From assembly GCF_902652985.1 (NCBI RefSeq), contig NC_047026.1, positions 26,102,001 to 26,166,000 of the forward strand: a DNA stretch of 64,000 bases, read 5' to 3'. Of this stretch, positions 58 to 50,461 are shown one piece after another. The position numbers and the translations under genes are program-made. The DNA comes from Pecten maximus (Eukaryota). Within the stretch, counting starts at the first letter, position 1; each line of letters begins with the position of its first letter. The notes under the pieces are model-generated. The model had not been told where the DNA came from. It did not search any database and saw only the letters and a list, made by a program, of their open reading frames with translations.

Positions 58-234
58 ACGTCATTAACGATGACACGCGCTATTCCTCCGTTTAGAGAGG
101 CCACCTCATCACCCTGCTCTCCACCTATTGTGATCTGGTATTCTGGTGGATCGTCACCTCCCGCAGCAAACCAGCCTTTCTGTTTATGCTGGAGCGTCAC
201 TGATGTCCCATTAAGACTGACCTTTACGCTGTCC
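58..234 (-). CDS. Gene A exon 24 (LG3 C-terminal part)
   Basis: Acceptor gtgtag, donor gtaagt; phase 2->2; DSVKVSLNGTSVTLQHKQKGWFAAGGDDPPEYQITIGGEQGDEVASLNGGIARVIVND. Confidence 0.85.
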
Positions 235-9200: not shown

Positions 9201-12200
9201 ATTGCGTAGTCATGCAGTAATAAAAAAAAAACTAACGCATTATTCCACTGTACTCACACTATCCGAACACGATCCATACACCACGTTCTTGCTTTCCTGT
9301 AACATGTACATGGGGATATCTCTATCTGTAATGCGTAGTTTTGAGATACAGCCGGTGAGAGATCTGGAAACAATTGGTTAGATAAATAACAATAGCAGAA
9401 TAACAGTTTACACAGTAAAACATGTTAGTTTAAAAGTAATGTACTGCCTCAGAGCAAATCATAACGTAACAATACTCTCCTTAACTATGGTACAACATTG
9501 TCTTGTCGTCAGAAAAATACAACGTTACATTTCAATTGTAATATAAGAAAGCAATATGGATGTTGAAAAGCGAGATAAGCAGGGAGTGTATAGTAAGGAC
9601 TTTTATCAGATACTGATATTATAATTGTTTGTTAAGTATGGCTTTTGGTACATACCGAATAAATACTAATGAATATGGTTGTCATAACCGTGTCATGTAG
9701 AAAAATATTTTTATCATTTACATTATTGAACATTAAACTCAATAAAGAGCGATGTCGTCATCGATATCAAATAATAAACTTTAAAATAGAAAAATGAAAT
9801 TAAAAAAAGATAGAAAACATTTCATCAGGAATTCATCAAACAAGGTTTGTTTCATCAAAAGATAGGATACAATGGAATGTATATCAATTTTTGTAATAAA
9901 GTCTGTACCTGAGCTTAGTTTTACCACCAATTATTTGACTCGTCAAACCTAATCCACCAACATAAATGCCGTCATCAATTCTAAGAGGAATTTCTTGTGT
10001 AAAAGTCTCAGGTGTAAAGGTCTCTGGAACGCCATCTAGGGTTGCTTCTATTTCTTTTGTTTGTACATTCACCTGTTAGAGATCATTACATATCATTAAA
10101 AGGACGATCAACATAGTTTGGGGTTATACGATTTTTCGACATAAGTCAGCAAAGGTTAAGCGTTATGTTCATGTAACACAATATCCACAACAAACATCCA
10201 TCACTAGTGTAACCTGGGTTTAAATAGTATGCTCAATCCAATCCCTAGATAATAAGGCGGCTGTTAATTCGGTAGAACACTACAAGAAAGATGGGCGTTT
10301 TCGAAAGTCATAACCTGGACGTATGTATTTAAAATCCGGGTAATATAATGTAATCAAAACGGGAATAGGGGTAATGACAACAGAACTAGCTTGCATGTCA
10401 AATCTGGGTTATATAAGATTCTAAAAACGATATGGGGTGGTGATAATAGAAATACCCCCTACATGTCCAATCCGGGTAATATAAGGTTCGCCAACTTTTT
10501 CGCGAATCATTTACATAAAGAGTGAAAAAAACCACTATAGACATTCTATCTATTTATTGAATTTGACCAGAAAACTCGACCAGCGTAACCGATCACAAGT
10601 CATTTTATTTCATCTTTTGTAAAAGTAGCATCTGCCTAATAGCAGAAATATTGTAACAATATTAAAGACATGTCAATGACGTTATGTGTAGGACATTTCA
10701 CGAAAATCTGTCAGGATATTGGGTCGATAGAGCGTATTCGAACCAATTTACCTCCACAGCGTGGAATAATCCATCAGCATATATATTTTCTTTACTCCTC
10801 AGAACAGTCGTTCCCCTCTTTGTTCTCGCTTCCATGTGTATGGAACCTTCAGAAACGGAAAGTAGCATTTGCAGGTGCTGAAACAGAGATGAAACACGTT
10901 ACATTAAATACTAAGCTTGGCTGTTAGTGACAAGCCGGTATTTCTAGTATATATATATCTATCTTACAAGATTTAGAGTATATATCAAAATTTGGTGTTG
11001 TTATTTTCGATTCATTCTTTGTTATTCTTGGGTTTATTAACAGGATTGTAAACACATTTTATTTCACATAGCAAAACACCGCGCCATTTTGGGTTGTACT
11101 AATTCCTATAGAGAAGTGTTTTCAAAAGTGAAATAACCGAAGCAGGCATATTCAGGTTAGTTGTGGTTTTCCGGAAGGATAAACGTTATCAACGTCATCA
11201 TAAGCTCCTACGACAAACTAAAATAAGTCATTACCTTTTAGTGAGAACCAGGGTAATAACTATAAAAACTAGAAAGAATGTTGATGTGACGAAATAGGAA
11301 CGTGGCCTTAGGTAATCAGGAGAAGGAAAATCAAGACTACCGAGGGGTCAGGGGTCAGTCAATTGACCTCTGACCCTCAGTTTAGTTCCTCGTGTACCAC
11401 TGATGTGTAAAACATCACTAATCTACATGAGTTCGTTATGTTTTAACTTCCTAGTATTTTTTTAGTTTCCTTGTAAAGTTTTAGCAATATGTAAATCATT
11501 TCAGTGAAAATAATCTTGAAGACAGTATTTTATTGTCCTTCTATGGCATCCATTTCCAGTCGTATATGCCGCCTATTATTATTATCGCCCTAACGTCTAA
11601 ACACGTACAAACCAGATATCATTGTCTTTATATTAGCTCAAGATTTAATAGTGTAGACGTCAGTACCATGAAATATGTTTTGAAGGAAATATCATGAAAC
11701 GCGGATGGATGTTTTATTATTGTATGACAGCGAAGACGTCTGAACACATGGCGGATTAATATCTTGGTCTCATGCATGACATTTAGAATTGTATCAAACT
11801 AATTTTGTGTAGCAAGGTAAAATCAGAAATGAAATGAAAACGTTCAGGATTAATCGTATCACATCGCCAGTCTATTGGCACGAATGAATTTTCTAAAAAT
11901 AACAGTTATAAAATATGTATCTTCATTGTCTCAATCATCAATTTAAGAACACATACAATTCTGAACTTCTCGCACTAGAGCTCTCATCCGAAATATATTT
12001 TGAATACATTTTTGAATATATATAAACTCAATAAAACGGGCCATACAATTGTATACTGTCGTGTTTCCTCTTATCAATATACTTTCTAGACGGATAATAT
12101 CGGATAATTGATGGTCATATTTGTTATATGTGGTGTGATATTGTCTCTATTATTACGTCAACATAGGGATTGAATTTTGGGATTTCACAACTTACCTAAT

Positions 12201-36200: not shown

Positions 36201-39200
36201 AGATTTCTCGATTTACTACTATCTTCTGTGAGTGATGTTCGAAATAACTCTTTTTGAGATGATCTGTGATGTGGTGGGTCTCTTTCAAAAGCGAGTTCGT
36301 CATTTTTGAGCTGTAGGTTTCTGGGTGATTCTTGTCGATGGGATGCAGATGGATGCTTCCTGCCTTTCTTCTTGTGATGTCGCCTCCGATTCGTTCTGCT
36401 ATTTCTTGGAAGCTCTGTTCTTGTTTTTCTATCGCCATGATGTCCCGGATGAAGTGCTGGCGACTTGTGAAGAGCATCAAGTCTTTGTCTGTGTCTGTTT
36501 CGGATATGCCGTGTGCCTCTCCTGGATGCACTGTTGTGATGTCTTTTCTCTGTAGTAATATCCACATTTTCACATTCTGTAATAAAACATACATCAAATC
36601 AAATAATTTGAAAAAACATTCGTTCCGTGAAAATGAAGGTATTTTCTTCTTTTTTCATTGCTTTCTAAATTATGGCCGGCGGAAACACAAACCCCTTTAC
36701 TTATGCTATCACGGTGAAACACCTAAAGCACTACTCCATACTATTCTTGATAAGCAGGAAAGAAACAAACTCTGACTAGTTTTGCATAAGATAAACAGGT
36801 TGAAATCCCGAGCACGATAGTTTATTGGTCATCATGTGTAGATCCTTGGTTACAAATGTAAACATAATTATAGATAACCCTTCATAAGTAGTTTGATATC
36901 ATATTCTCTCTTCTGATCGAAAACCTTGGCTATATGGGTTATCAGTAAACGGATAGAACACCAAAAGAACCCTGTTATATATGGGGTTTTTGTGATGTTG
37001 TACCCGTTTACTTATAACCGATGTAGCCAGGACTTTGTTTGTGATATAGCCATTTGCTAGCGAAAAAAAACTCTTGATATATAATTAGTTAACGGATACA
37101 ACCCTGGCTACATAGCTTATTAGTAAACTGGTACAAAATCAACAATCCCATGGATACATACGATATTAGTAAACTGGTACAACATCAACAAAATCCTGGA
37201 TACATACATTATTTGTAAACGGGTACAACGTCAACAAATCCCTGACTACATAGGCTATCAGTAAACGGGTATAACACCAACAAAACCCTGACTACATAGG
37301 CTATCAGTAAACGGGTATAACACCAACAAAACCCTGACTACATAGGCTATCAGTAAACGGGTATAACACCAACAAAACCCTGACTACATAGGCTATCAGT
37401 AAACGGGTATAACACCAACAAAACCCTGACTACATAGGCTATCAGTAAACGGGTATAACACCAACAAAACCCTGACTACATAGGCTATCAGTAAACGGGT
37501 ACAACGTCAACAAAACCCTGGCTACATAGGTTTTCAGTAAACGGGTACAACACCAGCAAAACCCTGGCTACATAGGCTATCAGTAAACGGGTACAACACC
37601 AACAAAACCCTGACTACATAGGCTATCAGTAAACGGGTACAACGTCAACAAAACCCTGACTACATAGGCTATCAGTAAACGGGTATAACACCAACAAAAC
37701 CCTGACTACATAGGCTATCAGTAAACGGGTACAACGTCAACAAAACCCTGACTACATAGGCTATCAGTAAACGGGTACAACGTCAACAAAACCCTGACTA
37801 CATAGGCTATCAGTAAACGGGTACAACGTCAACAAAACCCTGACTACATAGGCTATCAGTAAACGGGTATAACACCAACAAAACCCTGGCTACATAGGTT
37901 TTCAGTAAACGGGTATAACACCAACAAAACCCTGACTACATAGGCTATCAGTAAACGGGTATAACACCAACAAAACCCTGGCTACATAGGTTTTCAGTAA
38001 ACGGGTACAACACCAGCAAAACCCTGACTACATAGGCTATCAGTAAACGGGTATAACACCAACAATCCCCTGCATACATACGTTATTAGTAAACGGGTAT
38101 AACACCAACAAAACCCTGGCTACATACGTTATTAGTAAATGGGTTGATCATTCATCAAAACCCTGTGTTTATAAGAGATTTGTAAATTGGTAGATACATC
38201 TCATCAGTAATTGGTTGGTAAGTAGGTAGACAGGCTACATAGGTTATTGATGAAAACTTCAAAATCACATAGGAAAACCTAGCTTGTAGTTTATTGGTAA
38301 TGGCGCAGTGTAGAAGACTCCAGTAACTGTTTGTCACGACGGCGTTCAGCGAACCTATATCAAATTATTGTATTAAGACAACTGTTAAAAAGGTTCCCAA
38401 TAGTACGCCCAGTTTACGTCACGCAGTGTCGAACTATCTCGTTTTGCCATTGAGAAATACCCGTTCAGCCTATCCTTGCTAAAGAATCTCGATTAAAGAG
38501 AACATGTCAAGAAACTAGGCCATATTTCCCATTAGTTAAGGTCAATCAAAAAGTAAGAGTATCGAATAACCAGACCCATTCACGTATCCAACACTTACAT
38601 TACACAAATCTTTTAAATAGCCAGTAACTGTAAGAACTTGTAAAATGTCAATGAATGGAATTCTACCAAACATATTTAAATGGTAAAGAGAATAAGTTCA
38701 AATGGTTCTACACTGATTTACTTCTTTCTTTAATATATAACTTGTTTTTGAAAATAATTTAAACAATAAAATAGCATTGGTGAATTATTGGTTTTGAAGT
38801 CGTCCTACCAATTATACACTTTATATTTTCGTACACCTTGTTATTAACCACTGTATATTTATCCAAGTCAGATATGATCTTACAGTCATAAAAAAAACTC
38901 CCACGCAGCCTTTTACTACATGTATGTTAAATACTACATAGTAGATGTATTAACATGTCTTGAGTTACCTGTATACATATTTTACATAGATAAGCTAAAA
39001 CATGAACAGTTCACCAAACTGGTTACGAAATAAAAATCCTAAACGTGGCGCCACTTTGTGTTTGTTTGCGAAGTATTAACATTACAATAGCCGTAACCCA
39101 TGAACTGAGATATCGCCATTGACTAGATACGCCGATATTTGTCATGAGGTGATTTTAGAGGTGTGTTATTTTCAGCCAATCAGAACCGTGTATGGTATAT

Positions 39201-42200
39201 GTCCTGATCGAGCCAGGTGAGGTGATTATGAGTTTATGGCCTAGATACGGCGTGTTTGGTGCAGCGTGTCTGATTCTGATGTGCATTATGAAATATATAT
39301 ATATAGCCAGGTTTATAATCAGTTAAATGTCGCTTTCTCAGCTAAGCTACTAACATCAAGGTCACGCTTTGATGGAAAAGATTTTAAGCTAAATATCACT
39401 TGTTACAAAGAAAAAATACACTAAGATAAAACTATGATTACGGTTTGAGTTTACATTGTTTTAAGAACGGTCTCCCCTTTGGGCGAGATGAATGCGTTTG
39501 GTGTGTGTATGTGTGCTTTTGGAGGTTAATGTGATAGCGCGGAAATGATGCCTTCTAAAAGTGCTATCTCACTTAAGCATACTGCCGAATACATCCAGCA
39601 GGACATCCCACCCGGTCATATCATAATGACAACGAGCGAACCGGTCGTTTCACTCTAAAAATACCGAGCGTTAAGCGGGAGTAGAAATTACTGCTGTATA
39701 GACCGTTAGGAAGGACAATATCAAGGGAGGCATTAGGAAGGGCAGTATCAAGGGAGGCATTAGGAAGAACAGTATCAAGGGAGGCATTAGGAAGGACAGT
39801 ATCAAGGGGACATTAGGAAGGACAGTATCAAGGGAGGCATTAGGAAGGACAGTATCAAGGGAGGCATTAGGAAGGGCAGTATCAAGGGGGCATTAGGAAG
39901 GGCAGTATCAAGGGAGGCATTAGGAAGGGCAGTAGCAAGGGGACATTAGGAAGGGCAGTATCAAGGGAGGTATTAGGAAGGACAGTATCAAGGGAGGCAT
40001 TAGGAAGGGCAGTATCAAGGGAGGTATTAGGAAGGGCAGTATCAAGGGGACATTAGGAAGGGCAGTATCAAGGGGACATTAGGAAGGGCAGTATCAAGGG
40101 GGCATTAGGAAGGGCAGTATCAAGGGGGCATTAGGAAGAGCAGTATCAAGGGAGGCATTAGGAAGGGCAGTATCAAGGGGACATTGGGAAGGGCAGTATC
40201 AAGGGGGCATTAGGAAGGGCAGTATCAAGGGGACATTAGGAAGGGCAGTATCAAGGGGACATTAGGAAGGACAGTATCAAGGGGGCATTAGGAAGGGCAG
40301 TATCAAGGGAGGCATTAGGAAGGGCAGTATCAAGGGGACATTAGGAAGGGCAGTATTAAGGGAGGCATTAGGAAGGGCAGTATCAAGGGAGGCATTAGGA
40401 AGGACAGTATCAAGGGAGGCATTAGGAAGGGCAGTATCAAGGGAGGCATTAGGAAGGACAGTATCAAGGGGACATTAGGAAGGGCAGTATCAAGGGAGGC
40501 ATTAGGAAGGACAGTATCAAGGGAGGCATTAGGAAGGACAGTATCAAGGGGGCATTAGGAAGGACAGTATCAAGGGAGGCATTAGGAAGGGCAGTATCAA
40601 GGGAGGCATTAGGAAGGGCAGTATCAAGGGGGCATTAGGAAGGGCAGTATCAAGGGAGGCATTAGGAAGGGCAGTATCAAGGAGGCATTAGGAAGGGTAG
40701 AAATTTGCCTATGAAGGAAGTATCAAGGGAGGCATTAGGAAGTGCAGTATCAAGGGAGGAATTAGGAACGGCAGTGCCAAGGGGGCATTAGGAACGGCAG
40801 TATCAAGGGAGGCATTAGGAACGGCAGTGCCAAGGGGGCATTAGGAAGGGCAGTATCAAGGGAGGTATTAGGAACGGCAGTGCCAAGGGGGCATTAGGAA
40901 GGGCAGTATCAAGGGAGGTATTAGGAACGGCAGTGCCAAGGGGGCATTAGGAAGGGCAGTATCAAGGGAGGTATTAGGAACGGCAGTATCAAGGGGGGCA
41001 TTAGGAAGGGCAGTGCCAAGGGGGCATTAGGAGGCTTAGTTATATATACAGAAGAGAGGATATTGTATCCAAAATAGTCGCATTTTACGAATTATTCAAT
41101 GTAGAAAGCAAAATGTGTTAAAACTCATGATTGGGGGTTACAAATGCTACAACCTGCTCATATAACTCTTATAATGTTTGTACTGTATCTTACATGTTAC
41201 ACAGACCCCCTTTAAAAAAAACTCAGATCTATCTAAATTATTCTTCCAAGTAATTTTATAGAAATAGAGATTTGTTTATTTAGGGTTTTTTAAATGGTTA
41301 TTTTTAATCCCTAAAATGCTTGTTTTAGATTCTATTTAAGGGTTTAATCAAGCAATTTGCATTGCGATTTAACATTTAATCATGTGAGTAAGTAAACAAA
41401 TCATTATACCGATATTACTTACTCAAGTAACATTGCATGTTTGGCGTTATTGCATACATAGAATACAATTTTATTACTTACTTAGAAATTAATTATCGAT
41501 TTTCAGATTTTCAGAAACAAATTTGATATTTAATTACTTTTTATTCAATCTTTGTTGTGGAACGGTATTTCTCGATAGAATTATAAATATTCAAAAAATC
41601 CTATCTGTTCTGTAATGAGTTTATCATGTGAGTTCATCAAAACTACACACTTTGTACATAAGACAAGTGAAATACCAACTCCCAAAAAGTATGGCGTTCG
41701 AGATACCAATGATATCGTATTGATATCCTTATATCCTAAAATAAGCAATGATATCTTACATATGTATGATCCTGTGGACATTACATGTACATGCACTGAA
41801 CTAATGAAAACCATACGTCACAAACAATAGACAACATACCTTACTTAACAATCAATAAACAGCAAGTACTATATTTCACAAACAATAGACAGCATTAATC
41901 ATACTTCACAAACAATAGACAGCATTAATGATACTTCACAAACAATAGACAGCATTAATCATACTTCACAAACAATATACAGCATTAATCATACTTCACA
42001 AACAATAGACAGTATTGATGATACTTCACAAACAATAGACAGCATTAATCATAATTCACAAGCAATAGACAGTATTGATGATACTTCACAAACAATAGAC
42101 AGCATTAATCATACTTCACAAACAATAGACAGCATTAATCATACTTCACAAACAATAGACAGCATTAATCATACTTCACAAACAATAGACAGCATTAATC

Positions 42201-45200
42201 ATACTTCACAAACAATAGACATCATTAATCATACTTCACAAACAATGGACAGCATTAATCATACGTCACAAACAATAGACAGCAGATGCGTCACAAACAA
42301 TAAGTAGTAGTAATACATAAAACAAAACACAGGATGTACCATACTTCACAAAGAACAGGATGCACCATACTTCACAAAGAACAGGATGTACCATACTTCT
42401 CAAAGAACAGGATGTACCATACTTCAAAAAGAACAGGATGCACCATACTTCACAAAGAACAGGATGTACCATACTTCACAAAGAACAGGATGTACCATAC
42501 TTCAAAAAGAACAGGATGCACCATACTTCACAAAGAACAGGATGCACCGTACTTCACAAAGAACAGGATGCACCGTACTTCACAAAGAACAGGATGTACC
42601 GTACTTCACAAAGAACAGGATGTACCATACTTCACAAAGAACAGGATGCACCATACTTCACAAAGAACAGGATGCACCATACTTCACAAAGAACAGGATG
42701 CACCATACTTCACAAAGAACAGGATGCACCATACTTCACAAAGAACAGGATGTACCATACTTCACAAAGAACAGGATGTACCATACTTCACAAAGAACAG
42801 GATGTACCATACTTCACAAAGAACAGGATGCACCATACTTCACAAAGAACAGGATGCACCATACTTCACAAAGAACAGGATGTACCATACTTCACAAAGA
42901 ACAGGATGTACCATACTTCACAAAGAACAGGATGTACCATACTGCACAAAGAACAGGATGTACCATACTTCACAAAGAACAGGATGTACCATACTTCACA
43001 AAGAACAGGATGTACCATACTTCACAAAGAACAGGATGTACCATACTTCACAAAGAACAGGATGTACCATACTTCACAAAGAACAGGATGTACCATACTT
43101 CACAAAGAACAGGATGCACCATACTTCACAAAGAACAGGATGCACCATACTTCACAAAGAACAGGATGCACCATACTTCACAAAGAACAGGATGCACCAT
43201 ACTTCACAAAGAACAGGATGTACCATACTTCACAAAGAACAGGATGCACCATACTTCACAAACAAAATATAAAGCATAAACAGTATCACTCATAAAGCAT
43301 ATCTACGAAAAGTAGACCAAATATAAGATTAGGTTAACAGACAATGTATAAACAGTAACAATAAGGTCAGCAGACAAGAGACAAAATATCAACTTTAGCA
43401 CCAACAAATAGACAAAACATAAACTACATGGTCTATTAATAGGCTTAACATGTTTCATAGCGTCAAAACGAGGGGATGAACTATGGATGATTGCATCAAC
43501 ATACATTTATCAGAAAATAAAAGTGGATGCGAGAAATTTATTACGGGAACCAGGAAAAGCTAGACCAATGTACTGAACATAAAACAATTAAGGAAACACT
43601 AGGAATCACATTAGGCTAGGATAACATATACGGATCGGGATCTGGGGGATTTAATGAATTATGCATTACCAGGCACAATTTATACATAAACATTAAACAT
43701 TTATGTTACCACTATATCATACCCGGCATACACCTGTTGCGCTTTGCTGAGTAGCTGTTTGTTCTGATATGACTGGTACACATTAATTAAGATATTGGAT
43801 GTTTGCCAAAAGATGTTTACGTTATGGAATAAACATTTTTATTAGAATTGCTATAAAATAAAATATTTATAGAAAATGATGACTATATGTGGTAAAGGAG
43901 ACGAGAGACGATATTGGAGAGTGACGATTATTATTACAAGTGAGAGGTAAATCAACACGAATGATAAAGATTATTTTTCTTTTATATCTTTTGAATCATT
44001 TCCAAAATCAGCATATTCTGTTAAATATCAACAAAAGCGATATGATTACACAGATAAAACACCATTTGACAAGTAAAATTATTTGCAGTAAAGGCTTCGT
44101 TATTTTGAACGGATAAAGGATTTTAGAAAAGGAATTCGTGACCATCTTCCATTTGATATCTTGTGTCATCCAAGAAAAGTGTGTGATATATATGTAACAT
44201 TCTTGTGTACAAAACAACGTCGAAATAGTGTCATATATCATATCACGTGATAATTACGCAGTTCTGTAGAAACAGTATAGCGTAATCATACTGAAATATT
44301 ACACCTTTCTAGGACATCTTATTTCAACAACAGGTTATCAATCAGGTACAGAGATGTTGGAAGAGAGATAATGAAACAGTGTTGAGGAGGAATGAGAGAG
44401 CGACATAATGCATACATATATTTGGTCAAATTGACCTTAGGATTATACCATTGGATGCAGAACTACCGACAACACAAGCAAATATAATACAAAAATAAAA
44501 ATATCAACAGTCGACGTCTCCTTGAGTGAATTGCGATCCCCAGAATAGAGGGGGGCCAAAATACACTCTAGGAGAGATTGTTTTACTTAGTATCATACAG
44601 ACCTACAGTTACAGATGACTTAGTATCATACAGACCTACAGTTACAGATGACTTAGTATCATACAGACCTACAGTTACAGGGGACTTAGTATCATACAGT
44701 CATACAGCTACATGAGACTTAGTATCATACAGACATACAGTTACAGGGGACTTAGTATCATACAGATACATATGACTTAGTGTCCTACAGACATACAGTT
44801 ACAGGGGACTTAGTATCATACAGACATACAGCTACAGGGGACTTAGTATCATACAGACCTACAGTTACAGGGGACTTAGTATCATACAGATACATATGAC
44901 TTAGTATCATACAGACATACAGTTACAGGGGACTTAGTGTCCTACAGACATACAGTTACAGGGGACTTAGTATCATACAGACATACAGTTACAGATGACT
45001 TAGTATCATACAGACATACAGCTACAGGGGACTTAGTATCATACAGACCTACAGTTACAGGGGACTTAGTATCATACAGACATACAGTTACAGAAAACTT
45101 AGTATACAGTTACAGAAAACTTAGTATCATACAGACAGTTACAGGGGACTTAGTATCATACAGACATACAGTTACAGAAAACTTAGTATCATACAGACCT

Positions 45201-48200
45201 ACAGATACAGGGGACTTTGTACCATACAGACCTACAGATACAGGGGACTTTGTACCATACAGACCTACAGATACAGAGGATAGTCAAGAATATCTATAAA
45301 GGTTAGGCATTCAAATGTCATTATGTTTAGCATTTTGTCTAAATTAAAAGCCTTCCCTTTTTTCCCATTTGTTGTTCGGATGCAATGTAATACAGTTTCA
45401 TGTTTGTCTTGCATCGTTGTCTAAATGTCGAAATGATTATTGTCATTTTCCACAATTGTTTTAAGAAAAAAAGTTGGAATCAAATGTATTTATTTTTGTC
45501 TGAAACACATTGACGCCGGGAAATCCTGTGAATTATCCTAGTTGTTAGAGTGAGATTGGAGGTCGCGTTCCCACGGATCCCTGTCGTGGTAAAATGTTTG
45601 TACCTACTACAGACATACACAACAGCTTATACACAATGTATTGATCTAGGCTGTTACTATAGACTTGCTGTAATGTTCTCGTGTTTTCTTATGTCACGTC
45701 TATAAAGTGTACGGTGTACACGTTTACATTTATCGGCAATTCGTACAACACTGCACGAGATTCATACTTTTTCTTGTATGAAGAAAAAAATCCAAATTAC
45801 AGATATGTTCTAGTAGTGTGATTTGTCTGTTAGTTTTACGGCCTTTTTTTTTTTTTTTTTGCTGATAAATTTAAAACTTTTTATCAAGCTCAACTTCATT
45901 ATTCCCTATGGATTTATCTTAATTTGATTTCCTTTAAATCTGCTCCTGGCCTCAGCAGTTAATTAGTATATCATGTTATAATCATCTAAAAATAGAACAT
46001 GCCCCTACCTAGCGCTCACTGATTTACATCCCGGGATGATTAACAAAAGCATGGGTGTATTTATCTAATGCCGAAAAGTTCCATGGTGACTTTCCCCTTC
46101 AACCTATCTTTTTCGTTGACTTTGTAAGTAGTACATTCTGTTGTGACTTTGATCTCTCATCTTTCTTTGCCTTCTAGACAGCAACCAGCATCGACTGCTT
46201 GACGTTTTGTTTCTGATGGGTGGCTTTGATCGCTAGTTCACCATTCTTCAAAACAAACCAGTTTGCGCATGGGTGTATGACATATTTCCCTATATTTACA
46301 TATAGAAATTGGAGCATCACATTAGAGAATAGCATTTATCATTGGGCAGGTTCTCGGTTTTAATTGCAATTATCAAAAATTCAGTTTTGATTCTCACATT
46401 ATATCTTCATTAGGATATATTCTATGATATTTTTGTATTTTGATCATAAGAGGCTTTAAGGGTTTACACTATTTATAAAAGATATCTGTATTACAATAGA
46501 AAAATGTTTAATATATAGGTTTTTGTATTTGAAGTATGATTATATACATTGATAACGTAGTCACTCAAAGGCCAGTCTATAGTGTCCTTAAAAAGTATAG
46601 GGAGAATAAGGCCAAGTTGCTCAGGAGGAAAAGCACTTTCTGCATCATGGACGACACCATGAGGACAGTAGCATGTCATCTCGACCCCCTTAATGTTACT
46701 GTTTCAATATGTATTTTCTAAATGTTCATTTTTTTTTTGTCTTAACGTTCAACTAACTTGGAAAGTCGCTGTTGATCTCAGTTTTTTGTTTGGGGTTATA
46801 TGGGGTCGGGGAAATGTGATAATTCCATTTTATGCTTGATATATTTGTAATTCTCTATTCTCAGCTTTGTACTTCTTTGTTGACGAATTCGTAAGATAAA
46901 GCATTTTGTTGATATGTTGATCGGTATCAGCCGCTCTTTAATTACAAAGTACGACAGCTCACAACAAAGCTGAATAATAAACGTGATGATATTTCAATTC
47001 CCCAATACTTGATTTTCCATTTCTAGATAGTAACATATCTGCTTCACCTACCTAAGGTGTTTATATATGCAAGTTGATTCAATATTCAAGGACTTGTTCC
47101 CATTTTCACGATTTCTTTGACAGATGTCGACTGGCTACAAGAAACCTAACATTACAATGTTACAATATAGGCTGGTAGATAAAGACCATGGGAAGGCAGT
47201 CGACAGTTAATACTTGGTAAATATTCTATTTCCTTGTTCCATATAAAGTCAGACATGTTCATTCTAAGCTTGTTGATATGCCTTGTGGTTCAGTTGGGAC
47301 TATCCCACTGTGACTTACCCGGATTTGTCCTCAACAGTTCAGGTCTCATCGTTGAAGCGGAAGTCGCTTACACTTTGGAACCAACTTGTCTTATTCTACT
47401 TGTATTTTTTCGGCGATTTTCAAATAAATCTATACTTTTGTTTGAATGTTGCCCTCTTTTTGTCGATTATATGTTGGAATTATGTGTTGGTTCGATTGTC
47501 GGTATTCTGTGCTATTTTTGCTCTCTTGTCGATGTTGAGTTGTAATTAAGATTGTGTTAATGTCCGCATTTTATTTCGATTGTGTTTGCCCTGGTTTTGT
47601 TGATACTGTCTTTTTCATGCTAAATCTACCATTATTCAACAATGTTACCTTTTTAACACCTGGTGACTGTATAAAAATACGACACGTCAAGACATTAAAG
47701 TTAATAAGTATCATATGATATGCCTTGTAGACTTGTCAGTCTTAGTCAGGTTGAACATAACGGCATAAATATACACTGGAACGGGTTTAAATGGAATAGT
47801 ACCCACGAAATAATCCCCTACTGTAAACATGCCCTACTGAGGTCAATGGGGTCCGAGGTACACTATAGTCCAATAATTTCTAGTTAATCTAGGTGTATTA
47901 AACGTACGACTTATCAGCCATGATAAAACTTTATATGTTTAGTAAGTCTATCAGACCATATCAGTTACAATATGATTGCAATTCCTTCTGTACTCACTAT
48001 ATATACCTGATATCTACGTGTGCAGTTAGTTTTTGATATATTACAATATCCATTGTTTTGTCGTTTTTTTTAATCAAATTAACATAGCACATTTTGTAAA
48101 CAGTAATTAAATAGATTTTGGTAAAGACAGGTATAAAATGTAAAGGATTTATTTTTTGTATGAATCTGAATTTAAATAATTGCAGTAGTTATATATATAA

Positions 48201-48831
48201 TATATGTATACGTATAGTAAATGTCTACACAGGAGTCACTGGATAAACTGTACCTGCATTATTACTACGTTACCTGGTAGTAATGTATAAACGTTAATTA
48301 TGAAGTAGTAAAATTAACATATATAGCTTTACACTTTTTGTCAATATATTCTGTCCCATTACTTATAAACAATATTAAAAATATGAGTTTACAGAAATAT
48401 AAAGTGACTGTCATGTTGGTATATTTGAGATCAATTTAGATAAATAATAAGTGTGTATACATACAGGTAAAAAATGAATTACATCCTACAATCAATCTAC
48501 TTAGCACAGGTAGTGCATTAGGCCATATAACACGCCATGTGTTTCCCGGGGCGGTGTGTTTATAGCTCTCTAGTCTGAAGTCGTGATAGTTCCATTGTTT
48601 TACCTGGTGATTTACCTGTATACGCAACTCACCTTTCCCAAGACACCTTCTCACACCTGATTCTGTTCCACCGTCGACACCTCGTGTCTGAGATTTAGGA
48701 GACACATTTGTATGTTGGATATTCCTTTCAGGTTCAATCTTTCTGCTTTCGTATCCTGATATTACCAAACACAATAGAATGAAACATAGGTGAAATAAAA
48801 TCCTCCATCGAAGTTTCACTATTTTTTCCAT
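58..48831 (-). CDS. Gene A (whole span, 3' end outside window): secreted laminin alpha-like protein lacking the short arm, with coiled coil, mucin/proteoglycan insert and at least 3 laminin G domains
   Basis: 24 GT-AG exons join in consistent phase into one ORF of ~1672 aa. Signal peptide MEKIVKLRWRILFHLCFILLCLVISG; Laminin_II-like end LRNNIAELREKIDRARAITSALPVAVAM; LamG motifs QWYNLHVTR, SGCIGSVIVNG, VFDGDGY, YADGLFHAV, IYVGG, SLTGCISKLRI. Family assignment is by motif recognition, not a database search. Confidence 0.85.
2719..2852 (-). CDS. Gene A exon 23 (LG3)
   Basis: tttcccag|...|gtacgt; phase 0->2; KFNINIDLDVAGVTITESVVGNEEKLFTTLNHEDRWVTLVIEDL. Confidence 0.8.
4336..4470 (-). CDS. Gene A exon 22 (LG3 start)
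   Basis: ttgttttag|...|gtatgt; phase 0->0; LWHHCVQFVDISTPVTLEDLLESSRIYVTVSAGAVGTILNYKRKD. Confidence 0.8.
4856..5029. mobile_element. Small hairpin element with imperfect ~40-bp terminal inverted repeats enclosing a degenerate hammerhead motif (Penelope/retrozyme-like relic)
   Basis: 4856-4896 is an imperfect reverse complement of 4989-5029; central CUGAUGA...GAAA motif on the minus strand. Confidence 0.5.
4907..4946 (-). ncRNA. Degenerate minimal type I hammerhead ribozyme motif (probably inactive)
   Basis: Minus strand ugu-CUGAUGA-ggau-(11 nt)-aucc-GAAA-cg-C-c-acg. Stem II is intact but U16.1 is C. The canonical GAAACGUCACA occurs on the opposite arm at 4981. Confidence 0.5.
5590..5680 (+). 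mobile_element. Helentron-associated (HINE/pearl-like) 3' end relic
   Basis: GACG/GACA microsatellite (gacgggcggatggacagacggac) followed by a short C-rich/G-rich stem-loop and an A-rich end. Confidence 0.35.
5700..7240. repeat. 49-bp minisatellite, ~30 copies (homogeneous core 5902-7130, degenerate ends)
   Basis: Unit ggactcgacagtgatattagggacaccatacagcttgttatatcatgtt. Confidence 0.97.
8186..8414. repeat. 33-bp tandem repeat, ~7 copies
   Basis: Unit aattaaagcgactataactgtaaattttatact. Confidence 0.95.
9258..9363 (-). CDS. Gene A exon 21 (LG2 end)
   Basis: tttccag|...|gtgagt; phase 2->0; SLTGCISKLRITDRDIPMYMLQESKNVVYGSCSDS (LamG GC...C disulfide pair). Confidence 0.9.
9909..10072 (-). CDS. 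Gene A exon 20 (LG2)
   Basis: ctaacag|...|gtacag; phase 0->2; VNVQTKEIEATLDG...IDDGIYVGGLGLTSQIIGGKTKL. Confidence 0.9.
10752..10877 (-). CDS. Gene A exon 19 (LG2)
   Basis: tgtttcag|...|gtaaat; phase 0->0; HLQMLLSVSEGSIHMEARTKRGTTVLRSKENIYADGLFHAVE. Confidence 0.9.
12719..12878 (-). CDS. Gene A exon 18 (LG2 start)
   Basis: tttcaatag|...|gtgcgc; phase 2->0; GWPTSPSMVFDGDGYVLFP...FLKFSTRQREGVLLLLNDQRQ. Confidence 0.9.
12900..13100. repeat. Degenerate AT-rich tandem repeat (~33-37 bp, ~6 copies)
   Basis: Recurring ...ttcttaaaat..gatatcaaaatt...tata. Confidence 0.6.
13219..13331 (-). CDS. Gene A exon 17 (LG1 end)
   Basis: cttttcag|...|gtagat (weak donor chosen because it keeps phase); phase 0->2; RSANVSGCIGSVIVNGQAVGLANTGNTTQAVRTCTSK. 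Confidence 0.8.
13760..14250 (+). mobile_element. Internally deleted Crypton-like (DUF3504/KCTD1-ZMYM-type tyrosine recombinase) transposon relic
   Basis: ORF 13809-14378 contains RFQNATDVEIESILTDRDSKHTIK and FIRKFYADIRKASGEFY, resembling the N-terminal part of DUF3504/Crypton proteins; no catalytic region is present. Confidence 0.6.
14452..15740. repeat. 37-bp minisatellite, ~35 copies, with two alternating variants
   Basis: Unit ttcaggtacaggtaacattaagt(a/t)ccca(ctcctt/ttcatg)tca. Confidence 0.97.
17021..17165 (-). CDS. Gene A exon 16 (LG1)
   Basis: ttcttgatcag|...|gtaagc; phase 2->0; TGHTIEMRTTRLGNDTEPTLEATAFPDMQVLQRSPTTVQVSGSSPPDQ. Confidence 0.88.
17368..17501 (-). CDS. Gene A exon 15 (LG1)
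   Basis: atatag|...|gtaagt; phase 0->2; VAYGIELVDSVPTVSVTGTDGELYGTIKSSVTLETSQWYNLHVTR. Confidence 0.88.
17752..17842. repeat. 13-14 bp tandem repeat, ~7 copies
   Basis: Unit (ac/aa)ctatgccag(g)t. Confidence 0.85.
19219..19365 (-). CDS. Gene A exon 14 (LG1 start)
   Basis: ctataaag|...|gtgagt; phase 0->0; VAVAMVDGREYNAEVSSTSETLSPVTSLEVCFKPERSAMTVASFHGNGE. Confidence 0.85.
19820..20000 (-). mobile_element. Degenerate CORE-type tRNA-derived SINE fragment
   Basis: cagggttaaacgtctttcccaaggatac resembles the reverse-strand CORE/MIR motif GGTTAAGTG(A/T)CTTGCCCAAGG(T/A)CAC. Confidence 0.4.
20240..21885. repeat. Compound ~31-bp minisatellite with interleaved variant monomers
   Basis: Main unit cacagcgtcaacacacaaggacagaatatac; variants cacttcacaacaccaacaagacagaatatac and cagtgtcgacaaacaaggatagaat. 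Explains ORFs 20229-21074 and 21359-21562. Confidence 0.95.
22015..22178 (-). CDS. Gene A exon 13 (Laminin domain II-like C-terminus of the coiled coil)
   Basis: attttcag|...|gtatgt; phase 1->0; ETVRSNMHQIKE...ATKLRNNIAELREKIDRARAITSALP. Confidence 0.9.
22993..23289 (-). CDS. Gene A exon 12 (coiled coil)
   Basis: gattctag|...|gttgtt; phase 1->1; IVERWGTVNGNVAIIRDF...NRLEQAKMIAEAELQKAQ...MMTDLLAK. Confidence 0.85.
23669..23758 (-). CDS. Gene A exon 11 (coiled coil)
   Basis: ttttgaag|...|gtaaat; phase 1->1; DKLQKRAENEREKSDELISRSIPINRRHD. Confidence 0.85.
24395..25667 (-). CDS. Gene A exon 10: mucin-like Thr/Pro/Ser domain with acidic Ser-Gly GAG-attachment-type motifs
   Basis: ttttgtcag|...|gtaagt; 1273 bp, phase 0->1; internal 21-aa repeats (TTPIPTTQRPSTTVPSTPRPK); motifs TGSGGGDDED, LGSGGEE, DDDDIVFSGDD, EIGSGNEESD. 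Confidence 0.92.
26091..26208 (-). CDS. Gene A exon 9 (coiled coil)
   Basis: cctttccag|...|gtaggt; phase 2->0; TIIPVMKKAKEFIAKRSKTGNNVRLQLLAIVGRLADIVV. Confidence 0.85.
26488..26654 (-). CDS. Gene A exon 8 (coiled coil)
   Basis: tttctttcag|...|gtatat; phase 0->2; RNIALRNAYIERRPPNDQ...EIEQLATDSYQKSRQLGRTVESMA. Confidence 0.85.
27400..27720 (-). mobile_element. Highly degenerate DIRS-like reverse transcriptase fragment
   Basis: Minus-strand pieces, in the expected order: FHMETLRI, SFTHVP, LNLDLSTLPKVFIR (cf. DIRS RT FKMETL / DAYFHVP / LPFGLSSAPRVFTK); frameshifted. Confidence 0.35.
27867..27962 (-). CDS. Gene A exon 7 (coiled coil)
   Basis: tcatacag|...|gtatga; phase 0->0; RYLNSLTDRYMDARNYSYTANKEIRAVQRDVQ. 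Confidence 0.85.
28231..28396 (-). CDS. Gene A exon 6 (coiled coil)
   Basis: ttgtttcag|...|gtgaaa; phase 2->0; RCMDQERQYDAIFKSFKNRDARALFVDIARYRRRIETRLYGQIRGDVRQRIHTYQ. Confidence 0.87.
28690..28805 (-). mobile_element. Dispersed short repeat (putative 3' end of the Penelope-like family); other copies at ~30020-30130(-), 47305-47400(+), 51040-51150(+), 52370-52430(-), 61630-61810(-)
   Basis: Shared motif ...GATTTGACCTAG...GTCGATGAAGCAGAAGACGCTTA...CCTGGT(C/T)TTAATCTCCTTG. Confidence 0.6.
28912..29182. repeat. Mixed 8/10-bp simple repeat
   Basis: accttcatca / acctatca units. Confidence 0.95.
30880..31069 (-). CDS. Gene A exon 5 (coiled coil)
   Basis: ttccacacag|...|gtatca; phase 1->2; ALLDVTQLVRFVHLRAYERR...QAQSRAKAMHMILERIK. 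Confidence 0.85.
31110..32585. repeat. C-rich 9-11 bp simple repeat (atactacccc / atactgatccc), ~1.5 kb
   Basis: Directly visible; the minus strand reads (GGGGTAGTAT)n. Confidence 0.97.
33883..33985 (-). CDS. Gene A exon 4
   Basis: catttcag|...|gtcagt; phase 0->1; VSERFMSIHSGARHDITEVKNQLKVIHDENNRAY. Confidence 0.85.
34340..34435 (-). CDS. Gene A exon 3 (start of coiled coil)
   Basis: ataatgccag|...|gtacag; only phase 0 is open; EQRMRPKLNVAVHNLKQTMANVLQIMQKKVKK. Confidence 0.8.
36059..36576 (-). CDS. Gene A exon 2 (basic Arg/His/Lys-rich region); 3' boundary uncertain (36059 or 35986)
   Basis: tttattacag| phase 1 joins exon 1 as RRCLGK-E-CENVDITTEKRHH; cag|gtacag at 36059 gives a phase 0 join to exon 3. 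Confidence 0.65.
36921..38150. repeat. 46-bp minisatellite (~23 copies) preceded by a forward/inverted monomer pair
   Basis: Unit aaaccctgactacataggctatcagtaaacgggtataacaccaaca; inverted monomer at ~36983-37040. Confidence 0.95.
39445..39700 (-). mobile_element. MetaSINE-like SINE fragment
   Basis: catactgccgaatacatccagcaggacatcccacccggtcatatcataatgacaacgagcgaaccggtcg resembles the reverse-strand Meta domain; a homologous copy lies at 51900-52150 on the + strand. Confidence 0.55.
39705..41035. repeat. 25-27 bp purine/G-rich minisatellite, ~50 copies
   Basis: Unit ggcattaggaagggcagtatcaaggga. Confidence 0.97.
41875..42300. repeat. 30-bp minisatellite, ~14 copies
   Basis: Unit cacaaacaatagacagcattaatcatactt. 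Confidence 0.96.
42325..43263. repeat. 26-bp minisatellite, ~36 copies
   Basis: Unit cacaaagaacaggatg(t/c)accatactt; stop-free on +, which explains the three overlapping ~300-aa ORFs. Confidence 0.97.
44583..45282. repeat. 33-bp minisatellite, ~22 copies with deletion variants
   Basis: Unit gacttagtatcatacagacatacagttacaggg. Confidence 0.95.
46950..47400 (+). mobile_element. Penelope-like retroelement relic (RT C-terminal/thumb region plus downstream motif)
   Basis: Translates, with one frameshift and one stop, to RQLTTKLNNKRDD/FNSPILDFPFLDSNISASPT*GVYICKLIQYSRTCSHFHDFFDRCRL, matching the PLE pattern TKLYDKRDDFNFxIxxFPFLxSNIPxxPAYGVYxSQLIRYxRxC. Confidence 0.8.
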
Positions 48832-49512
48832 TGTATGTGAATATCGAAATAACACCTGATGTTCAGACACAGTTATACACCTATCACAATTTACCTGCTG
48901 GTGATCCACAAATTCACAGGTAATAATTTAACGTGTATGTTTAACTTCGCGAATCACGTGGTTTGTAAAGGGTATTGAGGTCATACGACTATATTCGGCA
49001 TTTGTAAACACTTGCGTCATCAGTGCGGTAAGGTTTTTGTGACATTCAGTCGTGGGACAGACGCACAATACGATGTACCATACGGTGATTTGACCTTTTC
49101 ATCGTCAAATCTGGCATTTTGGCAGTAACATGTCACTTGTACGGGCAAGCAGGGATGAAATCTATGATTTACAAAAAAGCGCTGTTGCATTATATCAGTT
49201 TAGATAAACAGATAGTTTTATTCGTTTACAAGGAGGATGCAGTTAACTTAGAGGTCTGTTTCAGTTGTGAAATGCTAAATAATGTTATCAAAATTTGGGT
49301 AAATGGCCAGGCGGATTTTGTTTAAGAATTGTTCATGAGTAACTTCAAATCTTTTATTGTCGTGAAATACAGGACAATACAGCGATACAAATAAGTAGCA
49401 TGCTATATATGCTAGGGCAGGTATTTATAAAGAGTGTTTGCTAGAGCATTAACGTTTGACGTTTACCTGTGTGTAGGGGTGTTAACTTGTGAGGTATTTT
49501 GTCAGGCAGGTG
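48004..49512. promoter_or_regulatory. Cluster of 15 CAGGTA/CAGGTG (E2-box-type) motifs around the first coding exon of gene A
   Basis: Sites at 48004, 48128, 48251, 48271, 48464, 48507, 48601, 48613, 48654, 48853, 48892, 48917, 49418, 49464, 49507 (either strand); about 1 expected by chance at ~35% GC. Confidence 0.5.
48633..48831 (-). CDS. Gene A exon 1 (ATG plus signal peptide)
   Basis: MEKIVKLRWRILFHLCFILLCLVISG-YESRKIEP...RRCLGK; strong donor aag|gtgagt, phase 1, matching exon 2. Confidence 0.75.
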
Positions 49513-50375: not shown

Positions 50376-50461
50376 TACATTCACCTTCGCAAGGACAGAT
50401 TTCAATTTCTTATATATATATATATAGAATAAAGTTGAAATGTCCATGTGACGGTAAATAC

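What the first reader, a model, noticed from the sequence alone, without database searches (positions are those of the whole stretch)
58..48831. A 'headless' laminin alpha-like chain with no LN/LE/L4 short arm
Seen: the spliced ORF goes from a signal peptide through a ~210-aa low-complexity N-terminal segment straight into about 515 aa of helical sequence. That sequence ends in a Laminin_II-like motif (NNIAELREKIDRARAITSALPVAV) followed by tandem LG domains. Known: laminin alpha chains have a ~600-aa coiled coil followed by LG1-5, and even the truncated vertebrate alpha3A and alpha4 chains keep some LE repeats. I found no Cys-rich LE exon in the 12-kb first intron. Inference: this is a lineage-specific alpha-chain derivative that cannot polymerise through LN domains. 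It may trimerise with beta/gamma chains or with itself, and could be an undescribed invertebrate ECM, adhesive or shell-matrix component.
Basis: partly seen in the sequence, partly recalled or inferred. Interest (0 to 1): 0.8.

Follow-up and report, generated by a model that had tools for sequence, protein, structure and literature searches.

The report
Headless laminin-alpha-like scallop matrix protein
A king-scallop gene encodes a secreted protein that looks like only the rod and first three cell-binding globes of a laminin alpha chain, with a mucin-like stretch in the middle of the rod; so far it is found only in scallops, and the public gene model misses its true start.

Summary
The gene is real and expressed. 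It lies on the minus strand of Pecten maximus chromosome C12 and is LOC117339075 / XP_033756340.1, named "uncharacterized protein".

RNA contigs from four studies splice the signal-peptide exon (ATG 48831, donor 48633) directly to the acceptor at 36576. No LN or LE exon lies between them.

The window's DNA has one G too many in a GGGG run (36141-36144). Every RNA contig that spans the run lacks it. This is why RefSeq starts at an internal Met (36093). The two other scallop orthologues read through in one frame.

The protein is about 1,731 aa:
- signal peptide
- about 237 aa of basic His/Arg-rich low complexity
- 364 aa of heptad-rich helix
- 373 aa mucin-like module (58% P/T/S, with acidic Ser-Gly motifs)
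- 183 aa of helix
- exactly three LG domains, not five, ending at the last Cys of LG3

The best solved-structure matches are laminin α2 LG1-3 and the α1 E8 fragment. The α1 alignment runs collinearly from the helix end through LG1 and LG2. Pfam Laminin_I and Laminin_II do not hit.

Only three relatives were found, all Pectinidae. Trimerisation is untested.

My reading is a new variant of a known kind, of moderate interest.

The parts
48633..48867 (-). Exon 1: about 31-36 nt of 5' UTR plus CDS 48831..48633 (66 codons + 1 nt, phase 1). Encodes a signal-peptide-like N-terminus and the start of the mature chain, including Cys63.
   Evidence: Sequence and translation. The 3' end of exon 1 appears as the loose end at 36578 in 4 of 4 runs. 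Loose lengths of 228 and 233 nt place the contig ends about 31-36 nt upstream of the ATG.
36577..48632 (-). Intron 1 (12,056 nt, GT..AG). It is rich in minisatellites and holds no exon that the transcripts use.
   Evidence: Direct exon 1 to exon 2 junction in RNA contigs. Tandem arrays at 37100-38144, 39706-41032, 41812-43262 and 44585-45280. No Cys-rich laminin-EGF-like ORF.
35986..36576 (-). Exon 2: basic His/Arg/Ser-rich low-complexity segment. The upstream 143 aa have pI 11.5, with 22 R, 15 H and 11 K. RefSeq's presumed start Met (36093) lies inside this exon.
   Evidence: The acceptor at 36576 and donor at 35986 are used in RNA. Homologous segments are read in one frame in P0002 and P0003. 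The RefSeq start ATG is TTG in one RNA contig and Val in Mizuhopecten.
36141..36144 (-). GGGG run: the assembly carries one G more than the transcripts. This frameshift splits the ORF in the window.
   Evidence: table 4: one letter is left out in X1 (95.5 of 95.5), in X5 (12.8 of 12.8) and in both spanning contigs of X17. The frame arithmetic was checked on the sequence.
26091..34435 (-). Seven exons encode most of the N-terminal helical region (P0001 residues 37-348): 34340-34435, 33883-33985, 30880-31069, 28231-28396, 27867-27962, 26488-26654 and 26091-26208.
   Evidence: Exact spliced mapping of P0001, all introns GT-AG. Joints 35985|34434, 34338|33983 and 33883|31069 are seen in RNA contigs. 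The heptad score is above all shuffles. The AF2 model is all-helical but of low confidence.
24395..25667 (-). Single 1,273-nt exon. It encodes the end of helix region 1 with two invariant Cys (RERC...IDCEQY), then a 373-aa Pro/Thr/Ser module with 21-aa repeats and acidic Ser-Gly motifs (GSGGGDDED, LGSGGEE, GSGNEESDF).
   Evidence: P 17.7%, T 27.9%, S 12.6%; 63-nt repeat at 24820-25101. The word share of RNA runs (0.43) equals the exon fraction of 21898-26708, 0.44. The motifs are invariant in 3 species.
22015..23758 (-). Three exons encode the C-terminal helical region (P0001 residues 773-956): 23669-23758, 22993-23289 and 22015-22178.
   Evidence: An exhaustive HMMER search with 22988-23332 found only this protein's own cluster.
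22015..22086 (-). End of the helix, KLRNNIAELREKIDRARAITSALP. It continues as VAVAMVDG in the next exon (19365) across a phase-0 intron at the rod/LG1 boundary.
   Evidence: It aligns to NLSRNLSEIKLLISRARKQAASIKVAV of laminin α1 (5mc9_A) as the start of a collinear 370-residue alignment. It is not significant when searched alone.
13219..19365 (-). LG1 exons (P0001 residues 957-1136): 19219-19365, 17368-17501, 17021-17165 and 13219-13331.
   Evidence: aligned to α1/α2 LG1; weak Laminin_G_3 hit at 983-1055.
9258..12878 (-). LG2 exons (P0001 residues 1136-1321): 12719-12878, 10752-10877, 9909-10072 and 9258-9363.
   Evidence: Pfam Laminin_G_2 7.8e-23 and Laminin_G_1 2.2e-18, best stretch 1172-1299..
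58..4470 (-). LG3 exons inside the window (P0001 residues 1322-1470): 4336-4470, 2719-2852 and 58-234. The last coding exon, with the stop, lies outside the window at -592..-697 (G000:C12:26101303-26101408). It ends the protein at the final Cys of LG3.
   Evidence: A second Laminin_G stretch appears.

Best explanation
This is a functional, expressed, single-copy gene of Pecten maximus. It encodes a secreted extracellular-matrix protein of about 1,731 aa.

**What it is.** The protein descends from the long arm and LG1-3 part of a laminin alpha chain. It has lost, or never carried, the whole short arm (LN, LE, L4) and LG4-5. It has gained a basic His/Arg-rich N-terminal tail. It has also gained a mucin/proteoglycan-like module inserted about one third of the rod length from the LG end.

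**Shown here**
- exon structure
- splicing of the signal-peptide exon directly to the low-complexity exon
- the assembly frameshift
- domain order
- three LG domains only
- conservation at 71-83% in three scallop genera outside the mucin part

**Inferred**
- The two heptad-rich helical segments total 547 aa, close to the length of a laminin long arm. I infer that they oligomerise as a coiled coil. My odds are about 35% with the scallop's laminin beta and gamma chains, 35% with itself and 30% neither.
- The P/T/S module would be heavily O-glycosylated and may carry glycosaminoglycans at its acidic Ser-Gly sites. It would loop out of the rod.
- The LG1-3 triad would bind a cell-surface receptor, integrin-type by analogy with the laminin E8 fragment.
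- Without LN domains it cannot join a laminin polymer. It would act as a non-polymerising, hydrated cell-to-matrix linker.
For: **Identity of the gene**
- XP_033756340.1, Pecten maximus.
- Exact 24-exon mapping with GT-AG introns.

**RNA evidence**
- Exon 1 to exon 2 junction in 4 of 4 runs.
- Three further junctions.
- One G missing in all contigs that span 36141-36145.

**Orthologues**
- They read the basic segment and the RefSeq frame as one ORF.

**Domains**
- Pfam finds only LamG domains.
- PDB, single sequence: laminin α2 LG1-3 1.1e-13; α1 E8 5.9e-12, with a collinear alignment of residues 933-1300 that includes the rod end; neurexin 1.4e-8.
- PDB, family profile: α1 2e-12, α2 3.7e-11, neurexin 2e-4.
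- Nearest language-model clusters are 'laminin subunit alpha-3-like' (0.97) and 'alpha-2-like' (0.96). Both carry Laminin_II plus LamG.
- NCBI's own name for the Mizuhopecten orthologue is 'Laminin-like protein epi-1'.

**Helical regions**
- Heptad periodicity is above all 30 shuffles in both.
- The AF2 secondary structure is all long helices.

**Absence of a short arm**
- No LN locus on C12.
- The upstream same-strand neighbour is an ASC channel.

**Copy number**
- Single copy.
Against: - Pfam Laminin_I and Laminin_II do not hit any of the three proteins at E <= 1.
- The rod-end exon alone finds only unrelated coiled coils in the PDB.
- The N-terminal helical profile finds nothing.
- LG3 did not align to laminin LG3. 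Laminin α5 LG1-3 and the α LG4-5 structures are not among the hits.
- No Cys lies at the start of the helical region, where laminin chains are disulphide-linked (Hohenester 2019, PMC6744579).
- Both AF2 models are of low confidence (pLDDT 33 and 41). Neither the LG1-3 triangle nor a rod is shown structurally.
- Oligomeric state, glycosylation, receptor and tissue are all inferred.
Confidence: 0.7

Rival explanations
1. This is a non-laminin LamG protein. A scallop-specific family would have joined three LG domains of some other origin to an unrelated helical region and a mucin domain. The likeness to laminin alpha would then be convergence of architecture plus generic LG similarity.
For: - No Laminin_I or Laminin_II Pfam hit.
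- The rod-end motif is not significant alone.
- The helical regions have no detectable relatives outside scallops.
- Much of the PDB score comes from LG2, which also matches neurexin LNS2 at 1e-8.
Against: - The top two PDB hits are laminin α LG1-3 fragments. They lead neurexin by 5 orders of magnitude with the single sequence and by 7 to 8 orders with the family profile.
- The α1 alignment is collinear from the rod end through LG1, the LG1-LG2 linker (GC...C..C) and LG2.
- The LG domains follow each other without EGF spacers and directly after a helical rod. Among known families only laminin alpha does this.
- The nearest language-model clusters carry Laminin_II.
Confidence: 0.17
2. This is a gene-model artefact or a decaying gene. 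Either the signal-peptide exon and the basic segment belong to another transcript or to a 5' UTR, or the frameshift in the window is real and the gene is a pseudogene in this species.
For: - The window's DNA has the frameshift at 36141-36144.
- RefSeq starts at 36093 with no signal peptide.
- Continuity from exon 1 to exon 5 rests on overlapping contigs, not on one molecule.
Against: - All spanning contigs in three runs lack the extra G.
- Mizuhopecten and Ylistrum read through in one frame.
- None of the 17 transcript variants in exon 2 makes a stop.
- RefSeq's start Met is polymorphic (Leu) and is Val in Mizuhopecten.
- A mucin/LG protein without a signal peptide would make no sense.
- Conservation across genera is 71-83%.
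Confidence: 0.05
3. This is a canonical laminin alpha gene whose LN/LE exons lie further upstream, or whose LG4-5 exons lie further downstream, outside the window.
For: - The window cuts off the last exon.
- The ORF upstream of the ATG stays open to 48927.
Against: - RNA contigs of two runs end 31-36 nt upstream of the ATG.
- A hydrophobic signal sequence follows Met1.
- A complete ASC-channel gene end lies upstream on the same strand.
- No LN-domain locus is on chromosome C12.
- The CDS ends with a stop right after LG3 in all three species.
- No further LG exon appears in the 40 kb downstream.
Confidence: 0.03

Closest known systems
Laminin α1/α2 chains, E8 region (C-terminal third of the long arm plus LG1-3; PDB 5mc9, 2wjs)
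   Same: - A helical rod runs directly into tandem LG domains without EGF spacers.
- These are the best sequence matches among solved structures.
- The alignment is collinear from the rod end (…ISRARKQAASIKVAV against …IDRARAITSALPVAV) through LG1 and LG2.
- A proline lies about 31 residues before the rod end, as described for the α1 kink at Pro2095. The equivalence was inferred, not aligned.
   Different: - No LN, LE or L4 short arm.
- No LG4-5.
- Rod interrupted by a 373-aa mucin-like module.
- Basic His/Arg-rich N-terminal tail.
- Pfam Laminin_I and Laminin_II not detected.
- No Cys at the start of the rod.
Truncated vertebrate laminin alpha chains (α4, α3A)
   Same: These alpha chains lack the LN domain and so cannot take part in three-arm polymerisation (general knowledge; PMC6744579).
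   Different: They keep LE repeats, an uninterrupted coiled coil and all five LG domains. The scallop protein keeps no short-arm module at all and has only LG1-3.
C. elegans EPI-1 (laminin αB), the source of NCBI's name for the Mizuhopecten orthologue
   Same: The name was given by the source. It implies that a laminin alpha chain was the best named match for the annotators.
   Different: EPI-1 is a full-length alpha chain with LN, LE, L4 and five LG domains. The scallop protein is not its orthologue in architecture.
Lβ knob of laminin beta chains
   Same: A non-helical, Cys-flanked interruption of the heptad repeats within the long arm (PMC6744579). Here two invariant Cys (C371, C390) sit at the start of the insert.
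   Different: The Lβ knob is about 30 aa, Cys-rich and in the beta chain. Here the insert is 373 aa, P/T/S-rich and in an alpha-like chain.
Agrin and perlecan (basement-membrane proteoglycans with three C-terminal LG domains)
   Same: - Secreted matrix proteins that combine Ser-Gly/mucin-like glycosylated regions with an LG triplet.
- Agrin LG is a weak PDB hit (0.039).
   Different: Their LG domains are separated by EGF modules, and they have no long helical rod. No EGF, SEA, Kazal or Ig Pfam hits appear here.

Membership tests
Laminin alpha chain (canonical) | N-terminal LN domain (PF00055) | tested here: not met
   No hit in P0001-P0003. The genome's LN loci are on C1, C2, C3, C4 and C7, none on C12. 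Transcripts start about 31-36 nt before the signal-peptide ATG.
Laminin alpha chain (canonical) | Laminin-type EGF (LE) repeats and L4 domains in a short arm | tested here: not met
   No EGF_laminin or Laminin_B hit. Exon 1 is spliced directly to exon 2. The only Cys-rich ORF nearby (51921-52085) has no Pfam hit and lies upstream of the transcript start.
Laminin alpha chain (canonical) | About 550-600 aa heptad-repeat long-arm domain, recognised as Laminin_I/Laminin_II | tested here: inconclusive
   The helical segments are 364 + 183 aa, with heptad periodicity above all shuffles and all-helical AF2 secondary structure at low pLDDT. PF06008 and PF06009 do not hit at E <= 1. PF06009 is unspecific: it rings in 8 of 14 prokaryote controls.
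Laminin alpha chain (canonical) | Rod end running directly into LG1-LG2-LG3, with LG domains closest to alpha-chain LG1-3 | tested here: met
   PDB searches: α2 LG1-3 1.1e-13 and α1 E8 5.9e-12 with a collinear alignment of 933-1300. Family profile: 2e-12 and 3.7e-11 against neurexin 2e-4. Language-model neighbours agree. LG3 itself did not align to laminin LG3.
Laminin alpha chain (canonical) | Five LG domains (LG1-5) | tested here: not met
   There are three LG domains. The stop codon follows the last Cys of LG3 in all three species. No more LG exons lie downstream.
Laminin alpha chain (canonical) | [quoted passage not shown] | tested here: inconclusive
   No Cys lies at the start of the helical region. 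Conserved Cys sit at P0001 positions 168, 371, 390 and 924, and two sit at the mature N-terminus about 200 aa upstream. The feature is as described in PMC6744579.
Laminin alpha chain (canonical) | Forms an αβγ heterotrimer | not testable with these tools
   No multimer prediction or biochemistry was available.
LamG / LNS domain superfamily (PF02210, PF00054) | Significant match to the LamG profiles above Pfam's cut-off | tested here: met
   Laminin_G_2 scores 81.8 bits (cut-off 22.9) and Laminin_G_1 67.2 bits, each with two stretches. The orthologues give the same result.
Mucin-type / part-time proteoglycan module | Long Pro/Thr/Ser-rich repeat region; acidic Ser-Gly motifs as candidate GAG sites | tested here: met
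   58% P+T+S over 373 aa. A 21-aa repeat unit is present. GSGGGDD(E/D)D, LGSG and GSG(N/K)E motifs are invariant in three species. Actual glycosylation is not testable here.
Neurexin / agrin / perlecan-type LG proteins | LG domains separated by EGF modules | tested here: not met
   No EGF-family Pfam hit in any orthologue. The LG1-LG2 and LG2-LG3 linkers are only a few residues long.

The most novel reading that the evidence does not exclude
Scallops may have a third, non-polymerising laminin. This alpha-like chain would assemble with the ordinary beta and gamma chains into a heterotrimer that lacks an alpha short arm and LG4-5. Such a molecule would be a natural E8-like integrin ligand. It would also carry a looped-out mucin/glycosaminoglycan module and a basic His-rich tail. 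This would break the rule that invertebrates make only two laminins, and it would show that the long arm tolerates a 373-aa insertion.
Probability: 0.2. Interest if true: 0.7.

Novelty: new variant of a known kind. Interest (0 to 1): 0.45.

Why it matters
Reviews state that invertebrates have two laminins built from full-length alpha chains (PMC6744579). An expressed, conserved alpha-like chain reduced to rod plus LG1-3 is a natural experiment. It asks which parts of laminin suffice for a function outside the polymer, and whether a coiled-coil rod can carry a large glycosylated insert.

There are also practical points. The public model XP_033756340.1 is N-terminally truncated by a one-base homopolymer error or allele. 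The Mizuhopecten and Ylistrum models likewise lack a proper signal peptide. Anyone using these models for secretome or matrix proteomics would therefore miss the protein.

Tried and rejected
- **Exon-by-exon Pfam**: too fragmentary. It gave only weak LamG hits.
- **PF06009 scan of the genome**: unspecific. It gave 144 coiled-coil hits and rings in prokaryote controls. The window was not among the hits.
- **AF2 of the LG part from a 3-sequence alignment:** pLDDT 33, so I ran no fold search, which would have been meaningless.
- **AF2 of the N-terminal helical part:** pLDDT 41. Only its secondary structure was used.
- **PDB searches with single exons** **and with the N-helical profile**: nothing relevant.
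- **Word-based search with the LG alignment for 315-1,000-aa relatives:** nothing.
- **Language-model search with the N-helical part:** no usable hit.
- **Literature searches** for the locus, the accession and 'laminin-like protein epi-1' in scallops: nothing.
I could not look for the signal-peptide exon in the Mizuhopecten or Ylistrum loci.
- **Joined model:** Whole-protein searches used the database protein P0001. Exon 1 and the two parts of exon 2 were handled apart.
- **Rejected:** a canonical alpha gene with distant exons, and a pseudogene (see the rival explanations).

Full report
**Where and what.** The window is G000:C12:26102001-26166000 of a 918-Mb genome. An exhaustive HMMER search with one exon (22988-23332, minus strand) returned a single protein, P0001, 100% identical over residues 803-901. 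P0001 is XP_033756340.1, 'uncharacterized protein LOC117339075 [Pecten maximus]', 1,504 aa.

**Gene structure.** P0001 maps exactly onto 24 coding exons, all with GT-AG introns. They run from 36093 to 697 bases beyond the start of the window (flank fetched). After the third LG domain the CDS stops at once. No further LG exon lies in the next 40 kb.

**The 5' end.**
- RefSeq starts at an internal Met and has no signal peptide.
- I laid RNA contigs of four runs from four studies on 30850-36800.
- So the donor at 48633 is joined to the acceptor at 36576, and nothing from the 12-kb intron is used.
- The loose parts are 228 and 233 nt long in the two longest contigs. The transcripts therefore end about 31-36 nt upstream of the ATG at 48831.
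- Exon 1 reads MEKIVKLRWR-ILFHLCFILLCLVI-SG|YE. This is a charged n-region, a 14-16-residue hydrophobic core and small residues before the likely cleavage site. The signal-peptide call is my reading of the sequence; no predictor was run.
- The junctions 35985|34434, 34338|33983 and 33883|31069 are also seen.

**The frameshift.**
- Exon 1 ends in phase 1, and the acceptor at 36576 puts the ORF in the frame that reads ECENVDITTEKRHH….
- In the window this frame does not join the RefSeq frame.
- Every RNA contig that spans the GGGG run at 36141-36144 lacks one G: X1 95.5 of 95.5, X5 12.8 of 12.8, and both spanning contigs of X17.
- That single-base difference carries the upstream frame into the RefSeq frame.
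- The Mizuhopecten (P0002) and Ylistrum (P0003) proteins read the homologous basic segment and the RefSeq-frame segment as one ORF.
- RefSeq's start Met is Leu in one RNA contig and Val in Mizuhopecten.
- None of the 17 transcript variants in exon 2 creates a stop; 11 change the amino acid.
- The assembly therefore has a homopolymer error, or the sequenced animal carries a frameshift allele. The public model is truncated either way.
- By arithmetic the full protein is about 1,731 aa (66 + 1 + 143 + 1 + 52 + 1,468).

**Anatomy** (P0001 numbering after the N-terminal part):
- Signal peptide.
- About 237 aa of basic low complexity. The 143-aa upstream part has pI 11.5 with 22 R, 15 H and 11 K.
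- Helical region 37-400.
- P/T/S module 401-773: 17.7% P, 27.9% T, 12.6% S. It is encoded by one 1,273-nt exon and contains 63-nt repeats.
- Helical region 774-956.
- LG1 957-1136, LG2 1137-1321 and LG3 1322-1504.
- Each LG ends with the usual GC…C pair. The protein ends on the last Cys of LG3.
- Both helical regions show heptad periodicity above all 30 shuffles, while the LG and mucin parts do not.
- AF2 gives only long helices for 37-400, but at pLDDT 41.
- Three acidic Ser-Gly motifs flanking the P/T/S repeats, and the Cys at 168, 371, 390 and 924, are invariant in three species.
- Identity to the two orthologues is 78-80% in the first helical region and 71-72% in the second. It is 69-83% in the LG domains and 54-62% in the mucin part.

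**Is it laminin-like?**
- Pfam sees only LamG domains in all three proteins. There is no Laminin_N, EGF_laminin, Laminin_B, Laminin_I or Laminin_II hit.
- Among solved structures the best matches are laminin α2 LG1-3 (2wjs, 1.1e-13) and the laminin-111 integrin-binding fragment chain α1 (5mc9_A, 5.9e-12).
- The α1 alignment is collinear over residues 933-1300. It runs from the last turns of the rod (KLRNNIAELREKIDRARAITSALPVAV against NLSRNLSEIKLLISRARKQAASIKVAV) through LG1, the LG1-LG2 linker and LG2.
- Neurexin LNS2 follows at 1.4e-8, CSPG4 at 7e-4 and agrin at 0.04.
- With a profile of the three scallop proteins the gap widens: α1 2e-12 and α2 3.7e-11 against neurexin 2e-4.
- Protein-language-model neighbours of residues 774-1504 are 'laminin subunit alpha-3-like' (0.97) and 'alpha-2-like' (0.96). 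Both clusters carry Laminin_II plus LamG. A mostly unlabelled 'Laminin G domain-containing protein' cluster with a mollusc member comes next (0.95). This last result is a lead only.
- Against this, the rod-end exon alone is not distinguishable from other coiled coils, the N-terminal helical profile has no relatives, and LG3 did not align to laminin LG3.
- My reading: descent from the rod-end/LG1-3 part of an alpha chain is well supported. Homology of the rest of the rod is plausible but not shown.

**Headless, and alone.**
- No LN locus of this genome lies on C12.
- The next gene upstream on the same strand is an ASC/ENaC-type channel whose last exon is at 55741-55977.
- The one Cys-rich ORF near the gene (51921-52085) has no Pfam hit and lies upstream of the transcript start.
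- The LG part finds only its own exons in the genome, plus one weak hit on C9. The gene is therefore single-copy with no close paralogue.
- Relatives in about 5.8 billion proteins are P0002 (Mizuhopecten yessoensis, named 'Laminin-like protein epi-1') and P0003 (Ylistrum balloti), both Pectinidae. A shorter-length search found nothing.
- The word search is blind to distant kin and to proteins outside its length range. The single exhaustive search used one fast-evolving helical exon. 'Scallop-restricted' therefore means 'so far'.

**How it probably works.**
- Shown: the gene is expressed. RNA runs hold 0.30-0.43 of the words of 21898-26708, and the exons make up 0.44 of that stretch. The protein carries a secretion signal, and the whole chain is conserved.
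- Inferred: the 547 helical residues match the length of a laminin long arm, and their conservation equals that of the LG domains. This suggests a specific coiled-coil partner.
[quoted passage not shown] In the scallop protein the mucin module splits the rod at about that point (183 of 547 residues).
- I therefore picture a rod with an E8-like cell-binding end, a looped-out glycosylated module and a basic tail that could bind polyanions or metals.
- Without LN domains it cannot enter the three-arm laminin polymer (PMC6744579).
- I could not test whether the partners are the scallop beta and gamma chains or the chain itself. The lack of a Cys at the start of the rod argues mildly against a classical heterotrimer.

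**Novelty.** I found no paper on this locus or its orthologues. Truncated alpha chains are known in vertebrates (α4, α3A), but they keep LE repeats and five LG domains. A chain with no short-arm module, only LG1-3 and a mucin insert in the rod is a new variant of a known kind. It is restricted and divergent, and its function is unknown, so I score interest as moderate.

**Limits.** Continuity from exon 1 to exon 5 rests on overlapping contigs.

Noticed in passing
window 55741-62454, minus strand: The upstream neighbour on the same strand is an amiloride-sensitive sodium channel (ASC/ENaC/FaNaC-type) gene. Exon pieces at 62224-62454, 60628-60837 and 55741-55977 hit PF00858 (3e-8, 0.008 and 3e-8). 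The last piece covers the end of the profile.
   Followed up: partly
window 5804-7207, 8185-8413, 14442-15723, 20259-21886, 28913-29181, 31107-32587, 37100-38144, 39706-41032, 41812-43262, 44585-45280: The introns of this gene hold at least ten long minisatellite arrays, with periods of 10-49 nt and up to 152 copies. Several give long spurious ORFs in all frames.
   Followed up: partly
window 34407-35893 (intron between exons 2 and 3): In run X1 a 1,487-nt contig at depth 78 covers this intron contiguously and runs on into unlike sequence at both ends. It could be a retained intron, a transcribed repeat or DNA in the library. It was not resolved.
   Followed up: no
window 50247-50573: Another first-stage note (s1-792341) proposes two minimal hammerhead ribozymes here. 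An Rfam scan of the whole window at gathering thresholds found no family at all. This does not exclude minimal motifs below threshold.
   Followed up: partly
L013 4091-4751, minus strand (about 5.3-5.9 kb beyond the start of the window): The ORF pieces resemble the C-terminal part of a retrotransposon reverse transcriptase (…YKALIRPHLEYSSVIW…). They lie just downstream of the gene's 3' end. This is my reading only; no search was run.
   Followed up: no
G000:C9:13685194-13685631: This is the only non-self genomic match to the LG part (E 0.003, 28% identity to LG2). It lies in an uninterrupted 1,571-aa open frame, which points to an intronless LamG-containing gene or retrocopy.
   Followed up: no
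P0003 residues 1-90 (Ylistrum balloti model): The public Ylistrum model begins with a VLGSVDAVVLGS… repeat instead of a signal peptide, then joins at the conserved 'EC(D/E)' start of exon 2. Its first exon is probably mispredicted. The Mizuhopecten model starts inside exon 2. All three public models therefore lack the true N-terminus.
   Followed up: partly
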